This document shows, in pieces, positions 11,397 through 24,900 of a stretch of DNA of 64,000 nt; positions within the stretch are counted from its first letter, which is position 1; each line of letters begins with the position of its first letter. A program made the translations under genes and the position numbers. The DNA is from Auanema rhodensis (Eukaryota > Animalia > Nematoda), in assembly GCA_964057225.1 (NCBI GenBank), contig OZ059898.1, forward strand, positions 6,448,001 through 6,512,000, in the 5' to 3' direction. The notes under the pieces were generated by a model. It was not told where the DNA came from, made no database searches, and saw nothing but the letters and a program-made list of their open reading frames with translations.

Positions 11397-14741
<3,345 letters not shown>

Positions 14742-15112: not shown

Positions 15113-15325
15113 GTACATGTTTTTAATTTTTATTATTTCTGTTTCAGGCAGTATACCAAAACAGTAAAGTACTTATTGAAAAGAGCATCATAATTACTAT
15201 TTTTGTTTAATAAAATTGAATCATTTCCTCTTACATTTTTTCAATTTATAATAAGTTTGTAATAAAATGTTCTAGGTGAGTTTTATTTATTTACATATTT
15301 TATCATTTGAATTATTGTTATAGTA

Positions 15326-17344
15326 ATGGAATCGATAAGAAATTTCGGAAGATCCATATATTCTTTTTGGAGAGAAGTGGTAGAATGGCGAAGCCCAGCA
15401 ACAGCTCCATATTTAATGCTTATTAACACAGCTTATTGGTAAAATACTTGGAGTTCTATTTTTTAAATTTCATGTTTTAATTGTTATAGGGCTGGCGTTT
15501 TCTATTTGGATGTTCATCATCAACAACTTGCTCTCGTATCTTTAGCTGCTGGTATTTTTAGTTGGGATGTTCTCTCAACACCATCTTATGAAAAGAGTAT
15601 AGCTGTTCATATAGCGAGTTGGCCTGTGCAATCATTATGGAGAGTAAGTTGTTCTCGAGCAAATCTTTAACCTTATTTAATTTATTTAGTCTTTTGCTGT
15701 TGCCTGTTGTTTTTATAGTGTTCATATGTTGAATGCTGCTCGTTTAGAAGTAGCATGTTGGGCAGCATACTCTTCAGGTTTGTATTAAACTTGAAGTTAA
15801 CATTTCAACATTAGTTAAAATTTTCAGTTGGTTCATTGTTAATTAATCCTGTTTGGGGATATTACAAAGTTAATCAAAAAATTTCTAATGTTGGAAAAAG
15901 ATGTGCCACTTCGGTTGGTGATGCTGCCACGGTAATAAAGTTTTAAAAGTCTTTACTTAATATTTTTTTCTCAGTTTGTAATTGTGACTCCCCTGAAAAA
16001 GCTTTACCAGTTAGTTTGTTATATTGTTTTATTTCAATTTGTTCCTGGTAAGAACAACTATTTATTTATTTTTCTTAATTGCCAATATTTAAGATTTATG
16101 GAACTGGATAAAGAGTGCATGTCAAACAATAAGAAATTGGTAAATTTTCGTCCTAGAATAATAAACAAAGTTTTTATTATCAGGTTCAAAGAAGGAATAA
16201 CAGAGCCTATTAAACGGGGCTGGAAAGCATTGAAAGAATTTCTGAGATATTGGTTCTGCGCTCATTGGTGGCCAGGTTTAAAAGCGTGGATTGCTGTTAA
16301 AGTATGATAGACTATTAAGCACAGAAATTAGTTTTTTTTTGGCAGATTGGAGAACCTTGTAAGAGGGCATTCAATTATTTCTGTTTCTGTTTGATTTATG
16401 TGGTGTGTGGTCACTGGGTGCCTCCACTTTTCCGATGGATTAAATCGAAATTATCTGCTTTTGGAGGATTACTCCACCGCACCATCGTTATTCCTGTAAA
16501 AAGGTAGGTTCCCTTGATAATTATATCAGAATTTATCCTTTTCTAACAAATAATTTAATGTTAACATTGAATTCATTTTAGATGGATGTGGGCGAAATTC
16601 GAGCAACTACGTATATGGCTCCGAAGACAATTGCATCGCTTAGCCCTTGCTATCCGTGATTCAGTACTTTGGCCTATTTGTGTACTTATAGTAGACATTG
16701 GCAAGGAGCTATGTGCAATTGTTTACCGGATATTCATGAAGGTTAGCTAGCTTTATGGATTTTTCCTTAAATTATATTTTTGAAGCCTATTGTTGATTAT
16801 ACTTACCACCGCTATAAGATTGTTGAAACAGCTGCTTTGATATATTTCCTGGGACCTGTATGTGAAAAAATTGTCAATAATATCCCCGAGAAGAATCCAT
16901 TTTGCGGTAACTTACGTTCTTGATATTCTAAACCAATTTTGTAATATAGAGGAAAGTGATGTGGAACTGGAAGGAATGCTACCGTCCGATATAGAGGGCG
17001 ATGCTGAAATTGAAGATAACTATTCGGAACACTCTGATTTAATACATCCTTCAACTCCTCTAAATGGTAATTTCTTTTTGTTGTTTCTCATTCACGCTCT
17101 TTTTTGTTTGGCTATTGATAACGTTATCATAGTTTCCGTTTAAATGTTTTTTTTAGAAGATGAGAACGACTTCGTATCGGGGCTTAACTTCCCGACAATC
17201 AATGCTTCAGAGTCCAGTGATGATGAGTTTGATCTTCACAAAGCCTCGAATAGGCCAATTCGACGAAAAAAGAAATCGTCTAATAAGTCCAGCAATCCGG
17301 ATGATGTTGGCTCCCATGATGACGAGTTTGAAGTTTTGCAATAA
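15326..17344 (+). CDS. Multi-pass membrane protein (about 480 aa), FAM134/RETREG-like candidate ER-phagy receptor with C-terminal LIR
   Basis: Twelve coding exons splice through GT-AG introns into one ORF: MESIRNFGRSIYSFWREVVEWRSPATAPYLMLINTAYWAG...Trp-rich helices...EESDVELEGMLP...YSEHSD...STPLNE...FVSGLNFPTIN...DDEFEVLQ*. The gene model is solid; the family assignment comes from recalled motifs. Confidence 0.75.
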
Positions 17345-17907
17345 ATATTGCTCTAATTAAACAGTTACTAACAGTGCCAATGTTTGAAACATAACTAATC
17401 AATGACGTAGTCATTTATACGCTTAGCATACTATGTATATCCATTTAGTGAGACTTGAATCTCGTCTATTCTTGTCATATTAGTTTTATTCGCTTGTTGT
17501 ACATTTTAAAATAATATACGAATGATTATGGGTATCATTTCTTTAAAATAAAATTTATTAAAGTTTACTTATCTTGATGAATATTTGGTTATAACGACAC
17601 CATCTCCATAGTGAGATTGAAAGAAACAGCCTGCGGGATGAGAGAGTACCAGACGACGAGAGTGTTCCATCGCACTCCCCACTAGCCACAACTGAAACGC
17701 ATAACACGGATTCGTGTTTGACGTGGCTATTCTTCGACTCATTGGAATATACTTCTTTACTTCTAATTTTTATATTATTTAAAATTAAAATTAATTTTCT
17801 TTTCAGATAAGATTTTTTTTCGTAATTATTTTTGCTTATTTTGTGATTTATTGAAAACGTGGCTATTATTTTTTAGTTCGTAAGCAGATATCGTCTTATG
17901 TTATTTT

Positions 17908-18756
17908 ATGTCCACAAAAAAAATATTCAATAAAAAATTGCTTTGGCAATACGTAAAAGGCGCAGGAATTTTTGCTTGTGTTGCTCATACCATTAGTGCA
18001 CATGTTGGAGAACTTGTGATATGTTCAGGACCATCTATGCAACCAACTATCCTAGATGGAGATTTAGTTCTAGCTGAAAGATTTAGTGAGTTTTGTTATT
18101 TTTTGTTAACGACTACTTTATTTTGAACGAATATTTATATTTTATTCTAAATTCAACGTTTAGGTGTAAATGGGGGAAACATTCATAGAGGTGATATAGT
18201 CGGATGCTTGAGCCCCAACGAACCTGAACAACTTTTATGTAAAAGAATAGCTGCAAAGGTTTGTTTTTATGTGAATGCAAATTATAGTTTCTAATATTCA
18301 AGGAAAGTGATAGAGTGGATAGTGAGCTATTACCAAATGGAAGAGTTCCACGTGGTCACGTTTTTCTACGAGGTATATTTTAAATATTTGCATTATTCGC
18401 TATTTTATCCCAATTCCTTATCTTTTATTATTATTAGTAGTAATTAATAATCAGATTGTTTTCTGATTATATGTTGATTAATGTTTGGCTTGTTAAGTAA
18501 TATGATTCTCTTCGACTTTTACTCCCACTTTCATTATAGGGGATAATGCGTTAGCCTCAACTGATTCTCGACATTTTGGTCCTGTCCCTGAAGGACTTGT
18601 TCAAATTAGATTGTCTTTAAGAATTTGGCCTCCAAATAGGCATGTTTATTTGAACTTTATAGACTATCAGCTAATTGAAATCAAATGTTTAGAGTTGGAT
18701 GGCTATCAGATCATTGGTTCTGGGAAAGTGAAGAAAATGTAAAGAGCCATAGGTAG
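17908..18756 (+). CDS. immp-1: Mitochondrial inner membrane peptidase subunit 1 (IMMP1L)
   Basis: Catalytic Ser motif CSGPSMQPT, catalytic Lys in LCKRI, VPRGHVFLRGDN...STDSRHFGPVP, RIWPP. Confidence 0.92.
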
Positions 18757-18973: not shown

Positions 18974-21900
18974 ATGGCTGTGAACGGGATTTACATCGTG
19001 CTTGGCGAAGCCAACACGGTTGTAGCCCTGTTGAACAAAGCCAGGAGGTAAATTCATATTTATATTCATTCATCATAAAAAGTGATTTTCAGACAGTTTC
19101 AACTGTCTCAACAGCCCCCTTCTTTGGAAGATACTGACCCGTTATTAAGAAATTTCGCTGATTTAAAAGATGTTTTGAACACGGTAAGTATTGTAATATC
19201 TTTTCTCGTTAACTCGATAATGATTTGCAGGTAGCTGATTTAGGAGATATGAATCCTCTAACTTATTTGTCACCTTTTCTTGATGTTGTGAAAGCAGAAA
19301 ATACTAATGGACCCATAACAGAAGCAGCTCTAGCTTCGGTCGGGAAATTTTTAAGCTATGGGTTGATAGATGCCAGCAGGTCATTCTAATTTTTCTTCTC
19401 TTATTAATGTAAAAATTATAGTATAAAAGCTGCTAACGCAGTGGGAGCTATTGCAACTGCTGTTGTGCAGACCAAATTTATTGGTGCAAAGAGTACAGGA
19501 AGTGATGAATGTGTTCTATATAAAATTTTACATGTAAACATTTATATATTTTAATTGTAACTTTTATTATTTTGTTGAAGGTTTTGCGCTCATTGCTTCT
19601 ATCACCTCCTGGAAGTTTGTTGACTGATGAAGCAGTATGTGAAATGATGCAGTCCAGTTTTCGCATAGCATTCGAAGGAGATCTATCACCATTACTTAGA
19701 AAAGCAGCAGAAGCTACACTTAGCGACATGATCCAGCTTATTTTCACTCGTTTACCTACATTCCATGAAGATATTCGACATCCCTATTATCGAAAGCTAG
19801 TTATGAATGCTAAAGGTGATAAGAAAAAGAGGAGAAGGAGGGCAGTTACGGAACCTACTGCTGACGATACGGATGCAGAAGTAAGCATTTCGGTTAATTT
19901 TCTGTTTGAAATTTCAAAACTACTTTCAGGAGGATTTAGAAGTTTTATCTGGTAATGCTGTCACCAGTACTCCCTCCGTTTCTGTTAATAATGAAGCTAC
20001 AAATTTGGCAGAATCTCAGACTGTTGCAATAACGAATCGTAAATTTTTTTAATTTTCGACATGGGTTAATATGTATAATTAGAACTTAATGTTGGTGCTA
20101 CGGCTGAAACAGTGACCACCGCTACCGAGGAAGATAAAGCAGATGAAGCGGACAGTGAAAGTGATGGTGATCAAAACTATAAAGAAGTATAATATATTAA
20201 TCTAATAGTGTTAAATACTTTACTTTAAGGAGACACATGTTAATAAGCCGATTTTGAAGGCTAAAAAATCAGATGATGAATCTACTCAATGTGTAAGTTC
20301 TTCGGAATTACCTTATGGTCTTCCTTGTTGCACAGAGCTTTTACGGTATTTTTATTTATTCGAACTTCGCTTGAATGAATTATTCTAGTTTTCTTATATC
20401 TATTGCAACTCCAGAAGATCGCCAAAACACAGAATCTATGGTCCTTCTTGGTTTGAATCTTATTACTGTTGCATTTGAGGTAATTATGATAAACAAAGAG
20501 AAATACGTTATTTGTTTTTATTCTCAGGCTGCTGCTGATCATTTATCTAGCTACACCTTCCTTATGTCATATATTAAAGATAATCTATGTAGAGCTCTAC
20601 TTAAGGTTAGGAAGTTGTTTTTAAGATATTGCAGCTTTTTAATTTAGCTTTTGGAAACACAAAAGTTGCCTGTTCTGGCTGCCACCAATAGAGTTTGCTT
20701 CTTGTTGTTCGAATCAATGAGAAGTCAATTGAAATTCCAATTAGAATCATATCTACATGAGCTTAAGAGTATAGTTTTGAGCGAACAAGTATAAAAACCT
20801 TTTTTGTTAGCATCGAAATGATTCAATTTTTAGAACTCGAGTGAGCGAAAGGAAATGGCACTGGAATCGATTGTACAATTATGGAGAATTCCGGGATTAG
20901 TAACAGAATTGTATCTCAATTACGATTGCGATCTTCACTGCAGGTTAGTGACATTGTAGAATAAAAACTATTCGTTATTTTCAGCAACATTTTTGAGGAA
21001 TTAGCAAAACTCTTAGCAGATATGTCGTTCCCAGTTTCTGGGTTAAGACCGTCATCACTGTTATCACTTGATGCTTTGCTTGTTGTTATTGATACAATTG
21101 ACCAAAACTGTATTTGTCGTCAAGCTGGAGGAGCTGTTTGTGGAGCCGAGTATATATACTTTGTTTTATATCCTTATATAGAATTCTGATTTTCCAGTAT
21201 GAGATCTGGACAGTTAGAGTTGCCAATCTTAAGTGGATACGATCTTGGAAAAAAAATATTAAATAGTGAGTCAATGGTCTCCGAAAAAGGTATTTTGTTC
21301 TAAGTATTTAACTATTAATTGTATTATTTAATATGTAGAAACGATCATTGAATCAGAAACTACCGTAACACTTCGTAGTAATAGACATGCTCCTTCCGAG
21401 AAAATGCCGTCAATGACTGAAGTACTCGAACAGAAAGATCGTAAGCGTATTCTAGCCGAAGGAACAGAAAAATTCAATCAAAATCCCAAAGATGGTTTAG
21501 TTTAAAATCAATAAGAAAATTAATCTTCAAGTTACAGGTATAAATTTCCTACGAAGCAAAGGTTTGCTTGGATCTGATGCCGACAGTGTAGTTCATTGGT
21601 TGAGAACAAACCCTCATTTGGATAAGAAAAAGATTGCTGATTATATATGTAGTAGAAAGCATGCTGATGTAAGTTTTTTTTTTCAATTTCATGTTCATGC
21701 TATGTACTGTCCAGGTTCTACAATCCTTTGTTCAATCATTCCCATTCGAAAATACACGATTAGATGAAGCTCTTCGTATTTTCTTGGAAACGTTCCGTCT
21801 TCCCGGCGAAGCTGCCGAAATAGCTATGGTTATGCAACATTTCTCAGAGCAATGGTATAGGGCTAACCATGAACCTTTCAATCATCCTGATGCTGCTTTT

Positions 21901-24900
21901 ACATTGTCATATGGTGTCATCATGTTAAACACTGATCAACATAACCCTCAGGTTCATTTATAATTAAATTATTTCTTATTGAATAATTTTACTGCAGGTG
22001 AAACGTAATCAACCACCAATGACTGTAGATTGCTTCAAACGTAATTTATCTGGAACAAATGGAACAAAAGACTTTGACCCGAAAATGCTTGAAGAAATCT
22101 ATCATGCTATTAAGTAAGCTTACTATAGTGATATTAAGAAGATAATTGCATTATAGGAGCGAAGAAATAGTTATGCCTGCTGAACAAAAAGGAATCGTTA
22201 AGGAGAATTATCTTTGGAAGGTACTCCTACGACGTGGAGCATCCTACGAAGGAACATTTGTTCATGCTCCTACTGGATGGAATGATCATGCTTTATTCTC
22301 CTTGGTTTGGGGACCTGCTATTGCTGCTCTCAGTTATATGTTCGATAAATCGGAACATGACATTATTTTGAAGGTAATAGTGGTGATCCATTTTCTTACC
22401 TAAATTAATAACAGAGAGCACTGAATGGATATCGTAAATGTGCTTCTATCGCTTCGCACTTCGGAATGAAAGATGTTTTTGACAATTTGATTATTCATCT
22501 GTGTAAATTCAGCACTTTGACTTCTTGGAGTGAAGGTTTGTTCAATTACGAAACTTAACTAAGTCGATGTTCAGGAACAGAAGAGCATTTGGAGTCCCGT
22601 AAGCGTGGTTTAGGTGAACTACCCCCTACATCTCCTGAAGCTATAGCTATAAACTATGGAATAAACAGAAAGGCTCAAGAAGCTACTCGTGTGGTGTTTG
22701 AGCTAGTTCATCATCATGGTGATATCCTCAAAGAGGTTTGTTTGGTTATTTTAATTTGCATAATAATATAATGATTGCAGGGGTGGTTAAATATTTTGGA
22801 TGTTTTGGTTCACCTTCTCCATTCTCGCCTGCTTCCACCTAATCTCACTGAAGTTTATGATTTTGTATCTGAGAAAGGATGGGTTTCAATTATTCGATCA
22901 CATTCTAAGTATATTTATTATATGTGTTTTGTTGAAGCTAATAATATGCTTAGGTCTCGCGAAGTGCAAGCTGTGCGAAATGAATCAGGCTTGTTATCCT
23001 GGTTCGGCTTAGGTGGAGGAGCTGCTGAAAATGAAAAGAAGAAACCAACACAAGAAGAAGTTAATGCTATGAAGGTTTGAATAATTAAAGTGGCTTGAAT
23101 AAAAATCATGCTTAAGTTGGCACAATCGGTTATCGCTGACTGCAAGCCATCGCAAATCGTCACCGACAGTAAATACTTAACATCAGTAGCATTATCTGAA
23201 CTATTAACTTCTCTTGTTAATTCGAGTCATGCAATCGTTGAGCCATATATTCGTGGAGAAGGGCAGAAGCCGGTTTCTTATATTATACGAATATATTTAA
23301 TTATCTTTATGTTATAGAAACATATATCAGAATCTGATGAAGATGCTTTAGTTTTCCAATTGGAGTTAATAGTTTCTATTGCTTTGGAGAATAAGGTTTC
23401 ATTATTGTGTAAAAACTTTATAGTTTCATATTTTAGGACCGTTTAACGGTGATTTGGCCAACTGTTTATCGTCATTTGGAATGGCTCTTGTCTCCACATT
23501 TTGGGCATTGCTTGGTACAAAAAGTTAAAAAAAATATTTTAATTAAATGTTCAGATTCTTGTGGAACGTTTTGTTGTTGGTCTTTTAAGACTTGCCAACC
23601 GAAACTTATTCAGGGATAATACTGTCTCTGATGAAGTTTTGAATTCGCTTTCTCTTTTATTAGTAAGTTATATTCCTTGCAATTTATTATATATTGATGA
23701 CTTTAAGAAATTATCTCCAAAAGCTATGTTTGTATATTCAAGACAAATCGCATTTGGTCTTTATGAATTACTTCATAATAATGCTGCTAATTTACATAAG
23801 AAAGAGCATTGGAAGATACTCTTTGCACTTATGGAAGCTTCAGGGGCGGCTCTACTACCTGAAGATGCACAAAGAGACAACGCATCAGATTCGGAGAGAA
23901 GGGCTTACTCTGATGGAGAATATGGGAACAATCGTTCAGTTTGTGAAGATAAAGGGTACACTTCCGATATTCCTCGCACAGTTAGAGAAACTCGTGAGTT
24001 TTGACAGATTTTTCTTCGATTTGCTGCTTTTTTACAGATAGTGGAGAAGCTGGAAGTCAGGGTAGTTCAATATCACTAAGTCAAAGTCGTGAATGGATTC
24101 ATCTAGATCACGGAGATGCTGCTCGTGCTACACAAGAAGCTTTAAGGGCCTTAGGATCCGATAAGCCTTCTCTTGGAAGAGGATCATTGGTATTATGTGA
24201 CGATCTCGGGAGGCATGAACCGGCTGCTTTCATTAAGGTTATTATTTTTTATCTATTTTTTTATATTTTTTCTAATTTTAAGATAGCTGAATGTTTGGCT
24301 TTCTTACTTCGGGATGCTGTTCATGTTACTCCTGATAATCTCGAATCTAGTATTCATTGCTTACGTACAATGGTCGAAGCAGGACTGGATGGGGGGAGGT
24401 AGAATCATTTGGAACATAATTTTGGATACTGTGCATTATATTTCCTTCAGATATGCAGGTGGCCCGATGTCAGGGGAAGCTCAAAACCTTTTAAAATCCA
24501 CAATATCTGGTGGCACTAACAAGACTAAATCTACTGGTAATAGAAGAGACAAGGTAAATTTTATATCTATTTGTAAAGACGTGAAAATCTTTTCAGAAAG
24601 AACTCACAACAGATGTTGTTGAAGAAGATGAAAATGTTAATGAAGAAAACCAACTCTCTGCTAACTATCAGCATGTTTCTCTGCAGTTGCTTGATTTATG
24701 CACAACGGTTCATAGCCTTGCACCTGGCATTCTAACTCAGTGGTCATCCAACAATACAACTGTAAATTTTTCAAATTTGTTACAAAGATAAATTTTTTTC
24801 TTAGGTTGATGCTTCGGTTCGCTCTTTATGGACTCAAGTTTGGAGGCCTTTATTGCAAGCAGTCGCTCGGTTAGGTTGTGATTGTAGACGTAGTGTTAGA

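What the first reader, a model, noticed from the sequence alone, without database searches (positions are those of the whole stretch)
15326..17344. Candidate nematode FAM134/RETREG-type ER-phagy receptor hidden by intron fragmentation
Seen: the spliced product has a hydrophobic N-terminal region, a long amphipathic middle, an acidic disordered tail and a terminal DDEFEVLQ*, a canonical acidic [W/F/Y]xx[L/I/V] LIR. Recalled knowledge: vertebrate RETREG proteins open their reticulon-homology domain with LxWxxP...N..FW; here VEWRSP...INTAYW. The RETREG3 tail carries, in order, SEEELAAFCP, DSEHSD, QTPLTE, FARDLPDFPSIN, DDEDD, DDFELL. This protein has, in the same order, SDVELEGMLP, YSEHSD, STPLNE, FVSGLNFPTIN, SDDEFD, DEFEVL. 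Six collinear motifs are unlikely by chance. Inference: this is a highly diverged FAM134 orthologue linking ER membrane to LGG-1/LGG-2. I am not aware of a FAM134 orthologue having been functionally described in nematodes.
Basis: partly seen in the sequence, partly recalled or inferred. Interest (0 to 1): 0.9.

Follow-up and report, generated by a model that had tools for sequence, protein, structure and literature searches.

The report
Nematode FAM134-like ER-phagy receptor candidate
This is a real, expressed nematode gene (the counterpart of the unstudied C. elegans gene C46F11.5) whose protein has a reticulon-type membrane-hairpin domain, a disordered acidic tail and a conserved Atg8-binding motif at its very end, so it is a good, testable candidate for the FAM134-type ER-autophagy receptor not yet described in worms.

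Summary
Window 15326-17344 (+) is a 12-coding-exon, all GT-AG gene for a 479-aa protein. Spliced transcript contigs from four runs of one study reproduce every intron, plus one in the 5' UTR. The gene is single copy in this 181-Mb genome. It belongs to a family found only in nematodes of clades III-V, including C. elegans C46F11.5, with no consistent annotation and no paper found.

AlphaFold2 on an orthologue gives helix, hairpin, short helix, hairpin, long helix over residues 1-175, and a disordered tail. This is the topology published for the FAM134B RHD. A [FY]-E-x-L core within the last ten residues is kept in the complete orthologues. Docking to a nematode LGG-1 got weak support (0.49 against a best control of 0.02).

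Descent from RETREG is suggested, not shown. One of 41 orthologues touches Pfam RHD_RETREG1-3, below cut-off, at the expected position (E 0.021). No RETREG sequence could be fetched, so no profile-profile test was run. New here: a duplicated Trp-rich 35-residue unit, and a LIR without the vertebrate C-helix.

The parts
15148..15275 (+). 5' UTR exon. It follows a ttttcag acceptor at 15141-15147 and is probably SL1 trans-spliced. It holds a two-codon uORF (ATG TTC TAG, 15267-15275).
   Evidence: Transcript contigs start at 15141 with one mismatch in the first bases, as expected if they carry the GTTTGAG end of SL1 in place of the genomic gtttcag (sequence). The SL1 reading is an inference.
15276..15323 (+). 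Intron in the 5' UTR (GT..AG)
   Evidence: Joint 15272>15321 (cut +3) in all four runs
15326..15438 (+). Coding exon 1 (aa 1-38): N-terminal helix, the invariant EWR(S)P turn and the start of hairpin 1
   Evidence: conservation
15490..15643 (+). Coding exon 2 (aa 38-89): rest of hairpin 1, short linker helix, invariant WP
15690..15777 (+). Coding exon 3 (aa 90-119): hairpin 2, first arm and turn
15828..15931 (+). Coding exon 4 (aa 119-153): hairpin 2, second arm (NPVW) and start of the long helix
15975..16047 (+). Coding exon 5 (aa 154-178): end of the 175-residue RHD-like domain, which spans 15326-16040 in all
   Evidence: The domain is 175 residues without gaps in nearly all orthologues.
16094..16139 (+). 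Coding exon 6 (aa 178-193): start of the Trp-rich amphipathic module
16184..16301 (+). Coding exon 7 (aa 193-232). It holds repeat unit 1 (aa 198-232, 16197-16301), with EPxKR ... YWFCAHWWP
   Evidence: hhalign of unit 1 against unit 2 gave probability 94.9%, E 4e-8
16346..16503 (+). Coding exon 8 (aa 233-285). It holds repeat unit 2 (aa 233-267, 16346-16450), with EPxKR ... VVCGHWVPP. Intron 7 (phase 0) lies exactly between the two units.
16582..16741 (+). Coding exon 9 (aa 285-338): amphipathic helix and the conserved LHRLAxAIRDSxLWPIC hydrophobic segment
   Evidence: single copy in the genome
16786..16906 (+). Coding exon 10 (aa 339-379): RYKIxE...LIYxLGPVC...IPEKNPFC, the end of the membrane-associated part
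16950..17066 (+). Coding exon 11 (aa 379-418): start of the acidic disordered tail, with the conserved SDVELEGxLP block
   Evidence: The equivalent part of the orthologue model has pLDDT below 50.
17157..17344 (+). Coding exon 12 (aa 418-479 and stop): FxxGLxFPxIxxSESSDxEFDL block (17171-17236), basic stretch, and the terminal LIR DDEFEVL (17318-17338; core FEVL 17327-17338)
   Evidence: LIR conservation; complex prediction
17345..17530 (+). 3' UTR. The transcript contigs end at 17524-17532.

Best explanation
The locus is an expressed, single-copy nematode gene, the orthologue of C. elegans C46F11.5. Its protein most likely sits in the ER membrane through an N-terminal 175-residue reticulon-homology-type domain (two short helical hairpins flanked by amphipathic helices). 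This is extended by a nematode-specific Trp-rich amphipathic module that includes a tandem duplication of a 35-residue helix-HWxP-helix unit. A roughly 100-residue acidic disordered tail then projects into the cytosol and ends in a canonical acidic LIR (DDEFEVLQ-COOH). The LIR is proposed to bind lipidated LGG-1/LGG-2 on phagophores, so that curved ER fragments marked by the protein are taken up by autophagy. That is the FAM134/RETREG way of working. It is probably a very diverged RETREG relative. Shown here: the gene model and its expression, family conservation, conservation of the LIR, and the predicted topology. Inferred: ER location, Atg8 binding in vivo, ER-phagy function, and common descent with RETREG.
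For: Gene and splicing.
Family: full-length orthologues at 38-52% identity in Rhabditina, Tylenchina and Spirurina, with a gene tree that follows nematode phylogeny. No paralogue in this genome.
Topology: AlphaFold2 on the N-domain of the closest orthologue (pLDDT 82.8, pTM 0.63) gives H2-19, hairpin H26-43/H46-66, H75-85, hairpin H87-104/H108-130, H133-171. The published FAM134B RHD is an N-terminal overhang, TM12 (43 aa), a linker with AH-L, TM34 (43 aa) and AH-C (PMC6542808).
Tail: disordered (pLDDT below 50) and acidic.
LIR: a [FY]-E-[LIVME]-L core preceded by acidic residues lies within the last 10 residues. It is seen in all orthologues whose C-terminus aligns with the family's.
Atg8 binding: the complex of the last 32 residues with a nematode LGG-1 got weak support, score 0.49 against a best control of 0.02. 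The runs agreed in at least 95% of contacts and partner pLDDT was at least 51. The mark was reached by 51 of 78 solved complexes and 2 of 108 mismatched pairs.
RETREG link: Pfam PF24456 RHD_RETREG1-3 is the top hit of the Panagrellus orthologue, residues 11-58 on profile positions 6-51 (E 0.021). The nearest named language-model clusters for the C. elegans N-domain are Reticulon and ARL6IP1 (PF02453/PF24456).
Membrane role: strongylid orthologues carry an insertion after the domain that matches the amphipathic lipid-binding repeats of Pfam Synuclein (E 6e-5), in line with a curvature-related role.
Against: No orthologue reaches the Pfam cut-off for PF24456, and 40 of 41 give no match at all.
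The family HMM found only nematodes at E <= 10, although only 8000 word-sharing candidates were scored.
The language-model scores (0.75-0.76) are in the range that shuffled proteins often reach, and the tail gave no hit.
Fold searches returned only generic helical bundles.
The complex score falls in the band the tool itself calls weak, and LIR-Atg8 complexes are well represented among solved structures, so the model may be scoring from memory.
Hydrophobicity of the hairpins is moderate (maximum Kyte-Doolittle 19-residue mean 1.4-1.8).
Nothing here shows ER localisation.
A published C. elegans screen of ER-phagy receptor orthologues and LIR-bearing ER proteins saw no effect except for tmem-131 (PMC12992112). 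Its gene list could not be read.
Confidence: 0.55

Rival explanations
1. It is a nematode-specific hairpin-plus-LIR autophagy receptor that arose independently of RETREG. The function is the same but there is no common descent, as with yeast Atg40 relative to FAM134B.
For: No significant sequence or profile link to any non-nematode protein. About 200 residues (176-378), including the duplicated Trp-rich unit, have no counterpart in the published FAM134B RHD layout. The linker between the hairpins is about 19 residues, against about 59 in FAM134B. The LIR sits at the extreme C-terminus without the C-helix.
Against: Out of 24736 Pfam families, the one sub-threshold hit in the N-domain is the family predicted beforehand, and it falls at the predicted position. 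The order of parts (RHD-like domain, acidic disordered tail, terminal acidic F-E-L-L-type LIR) is the same as in FAM134. Clade III/IV orthologues keep 'FEILD...' with a short extension after the core.
Confidence: 0.2
2. It is an ER or lipid-droplet membrane-shaping or scaffolding protein and not an autophagy receptor. The conserved acidic-aromatic C-terminus then serves another purpose, for example a di-acidic or C-terminal hydrophobic ER-export signal, or an adaptor-binding signal.
For: Hairpins plus amphipathic helices are also typical of ER-shaping and lipid-droplet proteins. Strongylid orthologues have synuclein-like 11-mer repeats. The complex prediction is only weak support. No functional data exist.
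Against: The terminal motif fits the LIR consensus exactly: acidic residues, F or Y, an acidic residue, then L/I/V and L. The aromatic and the last hydrophobic position are the ones kept across three nematode clades. Both controls with an unrelated partner scored 0.00-0.02.
Confidence: 0.2
3. It is a LIR-bearing receptor on another organelle, such as lipid droplets, Golgi or mitochondria, rather than on the ER.
For: Localisation was not tested. Amphipathic Trp-rich helices can target monolayers or other membranes.
Against: The double-hairpin topology with cytosolic ends is the hallmark of ER reticulon-homology domains (PMC6542808, PMC9126229). The nearest language-model clusters are reticulon and ARL6IP1.
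Confidence: 0.05

Closest known systems
Vertebrate FAM134/RETREG1-3 (ER-phagy receptors)
   Same: N-terminal reticulon-homology-type domain with two hairpins of about 43 residues and flanking amphipathic helices. Both ends are cytosolic. A long acidic disordered tail ends in an acidic F-E-L/V-L LIR. Size is similar (479 aa against 466-544). There is a sub-threshold Pfam PF24456 match at the start of the domain in one orthologue.
   Different: No significant sequence match. The inter-hairpin linker is short. An extra Trp/Cys-rich module of about 200 residues carries an internal duplication. The LIR is followed by a single residue, whereas FAM134B uses the LIR core plus a C-terminal helix for GABARAP binding (PMC8727931). 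There is no N-terminal extension before the domain.
C. elegans RET-1d / mammalian RTN3L (reticulon long isoforms acting as ER-phagy receptors)
   Same: An RHD membrane anchor combined with LIR(s) on a disordered region. RET-1d binds LGG-1 (bioRxiv 10.1101/2024.07.26.605287).
   Different: In reticulons the RHD is C-terminal and the LIRs lie in the N-terminal extension; here the order is reversed. None of the 41 orthologues scanned matches Pfam Reticulon PF02453.
Yeast Atg40
   Same: A small reticulon-like hairpin protein with a C-terminal Atg8-binding motif. It is regarded as the functional counterpart of FAM134B (PMC9126229).
   Different: Fungal, and its Atg8-binding motif is followed by a short helix. 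Sequence similarity to this family was not tested.
ARL6IP1 (RHD protein placed by Pfam in the same PF24456 family description)
   Same: A compact RHD with a short linker. It is one of the two nearest named language-model clusters for the N-domain.
   Different: The matching cluster representative is 146 residues, much shorter than this 479-residue protein. From my own knowledge, not tested here, ARL6IP1 has no long acidic tail and no terminal LIR.

Membership tests
RETREG/FAM134 | Reticulon-homology domain: two short helical hairpins joined by a cytosolic linker with an amphipathic helix, followed by a C-terminal amphipathic helix (PMC6542808) | tested here: met
   AlphaFold2 on the orthologue N-domain gave H26-43/H46-66 and H87-104/H108-130 hairpins, with H75-85 between them and H133-171 after (pLDDT 82.8). 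This is topology only, predicted on a 50%-identical orthologue and not on the window protein itself. The linker is much shorter than in FAM134B.
RETREG/FAM134 | Sequence membership: a match to Pfam PF24456 RHD_RETREG1-3 at its gathering score (27 bits) | tested here: inconclusive
   0 of 41 orthologues reach the cut-off. One (Panagrellus, P0051) scores 14.8 bits, E 0.021, residues 11-58 on profile positions 6-51. The window's exons scanned singly gave nothing. A six-frame scan of the genome with PF24456 gave only two weak matches elsewhere; I read the first as noise and did not examine the second.
RETREG/FAM134 | [quoted passage not shown] | tested here: met
   DDEFEVLQ-COOH follows a roughly 100-residue acidic tail. 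The core is conserved in clades III-V. Complex prediction with LGG-1 gave weak support, 0.49 against 0.02.
RETREG/FAM134 | LIR core followed by a C-terminal helix that strengthens GABARAP binding (PMC8727931) | tested here: not met
   Only one residue follows the core in the window protein and in most Rhabditina. Steinernema, Toxocara and related sequences have 4-7 residues after it.
RETREG/FAM134 | Profile-profile or reciprocal similarity to RETREG1-3 over the domain and the tail motifs | not testable with these tools
   No RETREG sequence could be obtained. The family HMM search listed only nematodes at E <= 10 among 8000 scored candidates. The PDB profile search was empty.
RETREG/FAM134 | ER residence and LIR-dependent ER fragmentation and lysosomal delivery | not testable with these tools
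   Needs experiments.
Canonical reticulons (Pfam PF02453) | A match to the Reticulon domain, with the RHD at the C-terminus | tested here: not met
   No PF02453 hit at E <= 10 in 41 orthologues. The hairpin domain is N-terminal. A reticulon cluster was the nearest language-model neighbour at 0.76, which is a lead only.

The most novel reading that the evidence does not exclude
The C46F11.5 family is the nematode descendant of the metazoan RETREG lineage and the missing FAM134-type ER-phagy receptor of C. elegans. It was remodelled by a duplicated Trp-rich helix-kink-helix module (and, in strongylids, synuclein-like repeats) that adds membrane-bending capacity. Its LIR works from a free C-terminus without the vertebrate C-helix.
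Probability: 0.4. Interest if true: 0.7.

Novelty: new variant of a known kind. Interest (0 to 1): 0.6.

Why it matters
The worm papers I read say ER-phagy receptors are only beginning to be defined in C. elegans. One proposes RET-1d and names SEC62, atlastin and CDK5RAP3 homologues as the next candidates. Another finds TMEM-131. Neither names a FAM134 orthologue in the passages I read. A conserved, single-copy, uncharacterised gene with an RHD-like anchor and a terminal LIR gives worm geneticists a specific candidate with a simple test: knock it out or mutate the LIR, and measure ER-phagy flux. If the RETREG link holds, FAM134-type receptors would reach back at least to the common ancestor of nematodes and vertebrates. 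It would also show how far the family can diverge while keeping its order of parts. The family occurs in parasitic nematodes as well (Haemonchus, Necator, Onchocerca, Toxocara). A practical point follows: a tag fused to the C-terminus would probably mask the LIR.

Tried and rejected
- Pfam on the ten longest exon translations: nothing at E <= 10.
- Pfam on full-length orthologues: nothing significant. The scattered hits (NOD2_WH, Cementoin, BenE, DUF4293 and others) are noise at E 0.03-1.
- A six-frame scan of the genome with PF24456 gave two weak hits on another contig. The first lies beside an RNA-binding-protein gene and I read it as noise. The second was not examined.
It could therefore not be repeated with a family profile.
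- A family HMM against the 5.8-billion set listed only nematodes.
- A profile against PDB sequences found nothing. The tail against PDB gave only a chance hit.
- Language-model and structure atlas searches: no usable hit for the whole C. auriculariae protein or for the C. elegans tail.
- Fold searches of the full model and of the N-domain against the atlas, PDB (Foldseek) and PDB-wide (VIA): only generic helical bundles, best Z 8.5. No RHD structure seems to be in the PDB.
- A metagenome scan with family patterns found no relatives.
- The supplementary gene list of the C. elegans ER-phagy screen is not held.
- A literature search for the peptide string DDFELL returned only 'Oddfellows'.
- Rfam on the window: no RNA family.
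- The spliced protein has no reference, so it could not be handed to the database tools. Orthologue ids were used as proxies and the spliced protein was analysed only in scripts.
- Rejected: polyploid or multi-copy gene; pseudogene or mis-splicing.
Full report
1. The observation

The region reads as a nematode-style split gene. Taking GT..AG boundaries by eye and checking them in a script gives 12 coding exons between 15326 and 17344 on the + strand. They total 1440 nt and encode 479 aa, with no internal stop.

The model does not rest on inference alone. Four runs of one study hold assembled contigs of about 1760 nt. These lie on the stretch with twelve joints, all GT..AG. Eleven of them coincide with my coding introns, and one lies in the 5' UTR at 15276-15323. 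Contigs that skip every intron must come from spliced RNA, so the gene is transcribed and processed as modelled.

The contigs begin at 15141, with one mismatch in the seven bases of the ttttcag acceptor. That is what a GTTTGAG end of the SL1 leader would give, so I infer trans-splicing at 15148. They end at 17524-17532. An in-frame TAA lies upstream of the ATG in the spliced mRNA. The UTR also holds a two-codon uORF at 15267-15275.

Composition fits the description. Residues 1-378 are hydrophobic or amphipathic and rich in Trp and Cys. Residues 379-479 are acidic and free of both.

2. What it belongs to

No spliced product can be passed to the database tools by reference. I therefore used an ORF that reads exon 5 and exon 7 in one frame to search the representative library. 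It returned full-length nematode proteins that align with the spliced protein end to end at 38-52% identity.

Two further searches, one with a single orthologue and one with a 20-sequence profile, listed only nematode proteins. They came from Rhabditina, Tylenchina (Steinernema, Panagrellus) and Spirurina (Toxocara, Onchocerca, Setaria, Gnathostoma, Syphacia, Enterobius). Nothing at all appeared between E 1e-95 and E 10.

A cluster look-up identifies the C. elegans member as C46F11.5 (two isoforms, 488 and 489 aa) and the C. briggsae member as CBG09774. Names given by the sources are 'uncharacterized' or mutually inconsistent automatic labels: RING-type, TLC, Bestrophin homolog, MBOAT_2 and GPCR. 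None says RETREG or FAM134. No paper in the library mentions C46F11.5 or CBG09774.

The gene is single copy in this 181-Mb assembly. A maximum-likelihood tree follows nematode phylogeny. It places the window protein in Rhabditina, near Diploscapter and the Heterorhabditis/strongylid group. This is a vertically inherited orthologue family.

3. Anatomy

The first 175 residues align without a single gap in almost all orthologues. They carry the invariant or near-invariant positions E-W-R-(S)-P, Y, N..FW, Q, WD.LL, H..WP, R, A...AY and NPVW.

AlphaFold2 on this domain of the closest orthologue (50% identical to the window protein) gives pLDDT 82.8 and pTM 0.63. The order of elements is helix 2-19, hairpin 26-43/46-66, helix 75-85, hairpin 87-104/108-130, helix 133-171. 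The full-length model gives the same.

The published model of the FAM134B RHD (residues 80-260) consists of an N-terminal overhang, TM12 (92-134), a linker with the amphipathic helix AH-L, TM34 (194-236) and the amphipathic helix AH-C (PMC6542808). Hairpin lengths (41-44 against 43 residues) and the order of parts agree. The linker is much shorter here, about 19 residues against about 59.

Residues 176-378 are helical at moderate confidence and strongly amphipathic. Within them, profile comparison of sub-alignments shows that residues 198-232 and 233-267 are a tandem duplication (hhalign probability 94.9%, E 4e-8). Each unit reads EPxKR, then an aromatic-rich helix, C-x-H-W-x-P, then a second helix. 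Intron 7, in phase 0, lies exactly at the junction of the two units.

Strongylid orthologues carry an extra insertion directly after the N-domain. It matches the 11-residue amphipathic lipid-binding repeats of Pfam Synuclein (E 6e-5 to 1e-3, one at the gathering score). This spot therefore tolerates, and perhaps selects for, membrane-surface helices.

From residue 379 the model is disordered. The sequence there keeps four conserved blocks: IPEKNPFC-(D/E)(D/E)SDVELEGxLP, FxxGLxFPxI, SESSDxEFDL followed by a basic run, and the terminal motif.

4. The terminal motif

In the window protein the last eight residues are DDEFEVLQ. Across the family, an acidic run followed by [F/Y]-E-[L/I/V/M/E]-L lies within the last ten residues in clades III, IV and V. 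Examples are DDEFELLQ, DDEYELLE, DEDFEVLS, DDSFEVLDK, QFEILDSVDK and QFEILDITRLK. This holds for every orthologue whose C-terminus aligns with the family. Sequences that lack it end earlier or in unrelated sequence, and look like incomplete or mispredicted models.

This fits the canonical LIR and the FAM134 arrangement, a LIR at the end of a disordered region (PMC9126229). It differs in one respect. Vertebrate FAM134B binds GABARAP with the LIR core plus a following helix (PMC8727931). In Rhabditina only one residue follows the core.

The genome encodes both an LGG-1-type and an LGG-2-type Atg8. I fetched a nematode LGG-1 (Litomosoides, 118 aa) and ran it with the last 32 residues of the window protein in the controlled complex test. 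The verdict was weak support: score 0.49, best of three controls 0.02. The runs agreed in at least 95% of contacts and partner pLDDT was at least 51. The mark was reached by 51 of 78 solved complexes and 2 of 108 mismatched pairs. Passes at 0.60 or below are rated weak, and a resemblance to solved LIR complexes may be scored from memory. Given the strong prior from the sequence, I take this as mild extra support.

5. Is it a RETREG?

Direct sequence evidence is thin. Pfam gives nothing above cut-off for any orthologue. However, one orthologue (Panagrellus) has PF24456 RHD_RETREG1-3 as its best hit, at E 0.021 and 14.8 bits.

Hits of this strength to unrelated families occur in the same scan, so taken alone this one is noise-level. 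What counts is that it is the one family named in advance, at the predicted place. Treated as a test of a single model on 41 sequences, the nominal expectation is about 3.5e-5 (my arithmetic). Allowing for the excess of chance hits among membrane families, I put it near 1e-3.

A language-model feature search with the C. elegans N-domain gave Reticulon and ARL6IP1 (PF02453/PF24456) as its only named neighbours, at 0.76 and 0.75. By the tool's own calibration those scores are leads only. The tail gave no hit. Structure searches were uninformative, as expected when no RHD structure has been solved.

I could not obtain any RETREG sequence through the tools. Of those motifs, YSEHSD falls in a segment that is not conserved among nematodes, so it should be discounted. 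The others fall in conserved blocks.

My reading is as follows. An RHD-type domain is likely. The way of working matches FAM134. Common descent with RETREG is more likely than not, but unproven.

6. Mechanism proposed

- The Trp-rich duplicated module, and in strongylids the synuclein-like repeats, add interfacial helices that should increase curvature sensing or induction (inference).
- The acidic tail, with Ser clusters in acidic context that look like casein-kinase-type sites, spans the distance to the phagophore (inference).
- The terminal LIR engages LGG-1/LGG-2 (sequence, conservation and weak in-silico support).

Rivals are convergence without homology, a non-autophagic membrane-shaping role with a different use of the C-terminus, and a non-ER location.

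7. Novelty and value

Papers on worm ER-phagy describe RET-1d and TMEM-131. One lists SEC62, atlastin and CDK5RAP3 homologues as further candidates and leaves room for nematode-specific receptors. No FAM134 orthologue is named in the passages I read. This family is therefore an unannotated, testable candidate. I class it as a new variant of a known kind (RHD plus LIR receptor), with moderate to high interest for autophagy and nematode biologists.

Surroundings

The gene lies between a DEAD-box helicase gene (upstream, +) and an IMP1/2-type peptidase gene, followed by a Sec7 ArfGEF gene (downstream, +). Nothing on the opposite strand overlaps it, and Rfam finds no RNA family in the window.

Noticed in passing
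window 15267-15275: A two-codon upstream ORF (ATG TTC TAG) lies in the 5' UTR exon, just before the UTR intron.
   Followed up: no
window 15141-15148: The transcript contigs start on the ttttcag acceptor with a single mismatch. This fits an SL1 leader end (GTTTGAG) trans-spliced at 15148.
   Followed up: partly
window 16197-16301 and 16346-16450: Two 35-residue units (EPxKR ... C-x-H-W-x-P ... W-I) form a tandem duplication (hhalign probability 94.9%). Intron 7, in phase 0, lies exactly between them.
   Followed up: yes
orthologues P0049 (221-303), P0018 (236-310), P0015 (184-226): Strongylid orthologues have an insertion after the RHD-like domain made of IKNGI-type 11-residue repeats. It matches Pfam Synuclein (E 6e-5 to 1e-3). 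The window protein lacks it.
   Followed up: partly
G000:C5:7438659-7438943 (L006) and G000:C4:8033597-8033954 (L004): The genome has one GABARAP/LGG-1-type and one LC3/LGG-2-type Atg8 gene, each split by short introns.
   Followed up: partly
window 13129-14400, 17908-18126, 19572-24004 (+): The neighbouring genes look like a DEAD-box RNA helicase, a mitochondrial inner-membrane (IMP1/2-type) signal peptidase and a Sec7-domain ArfGEF (GBF1-like). This was read from ORF translations only.
   Followed up: no
orthologue records: Public automatic names for members of this one family contradict each other (RING-type, TLC domain, Bestrophin homolog, MBOAT_2, GPCR). None is backed by a Pfam hit here.
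   Followed up: partly
window 17171-17236: The FxxGLxFPxIxxSESSDxEFDL block is as conserved as the LIR. The Ser cluster in acidic context looks like casein-kinase-type sites next to an F-D-L. It could be a second docking site, for example for FIP200/ATG-11 or a second Atg8 contact, but this is speculation.
   Followed up: no
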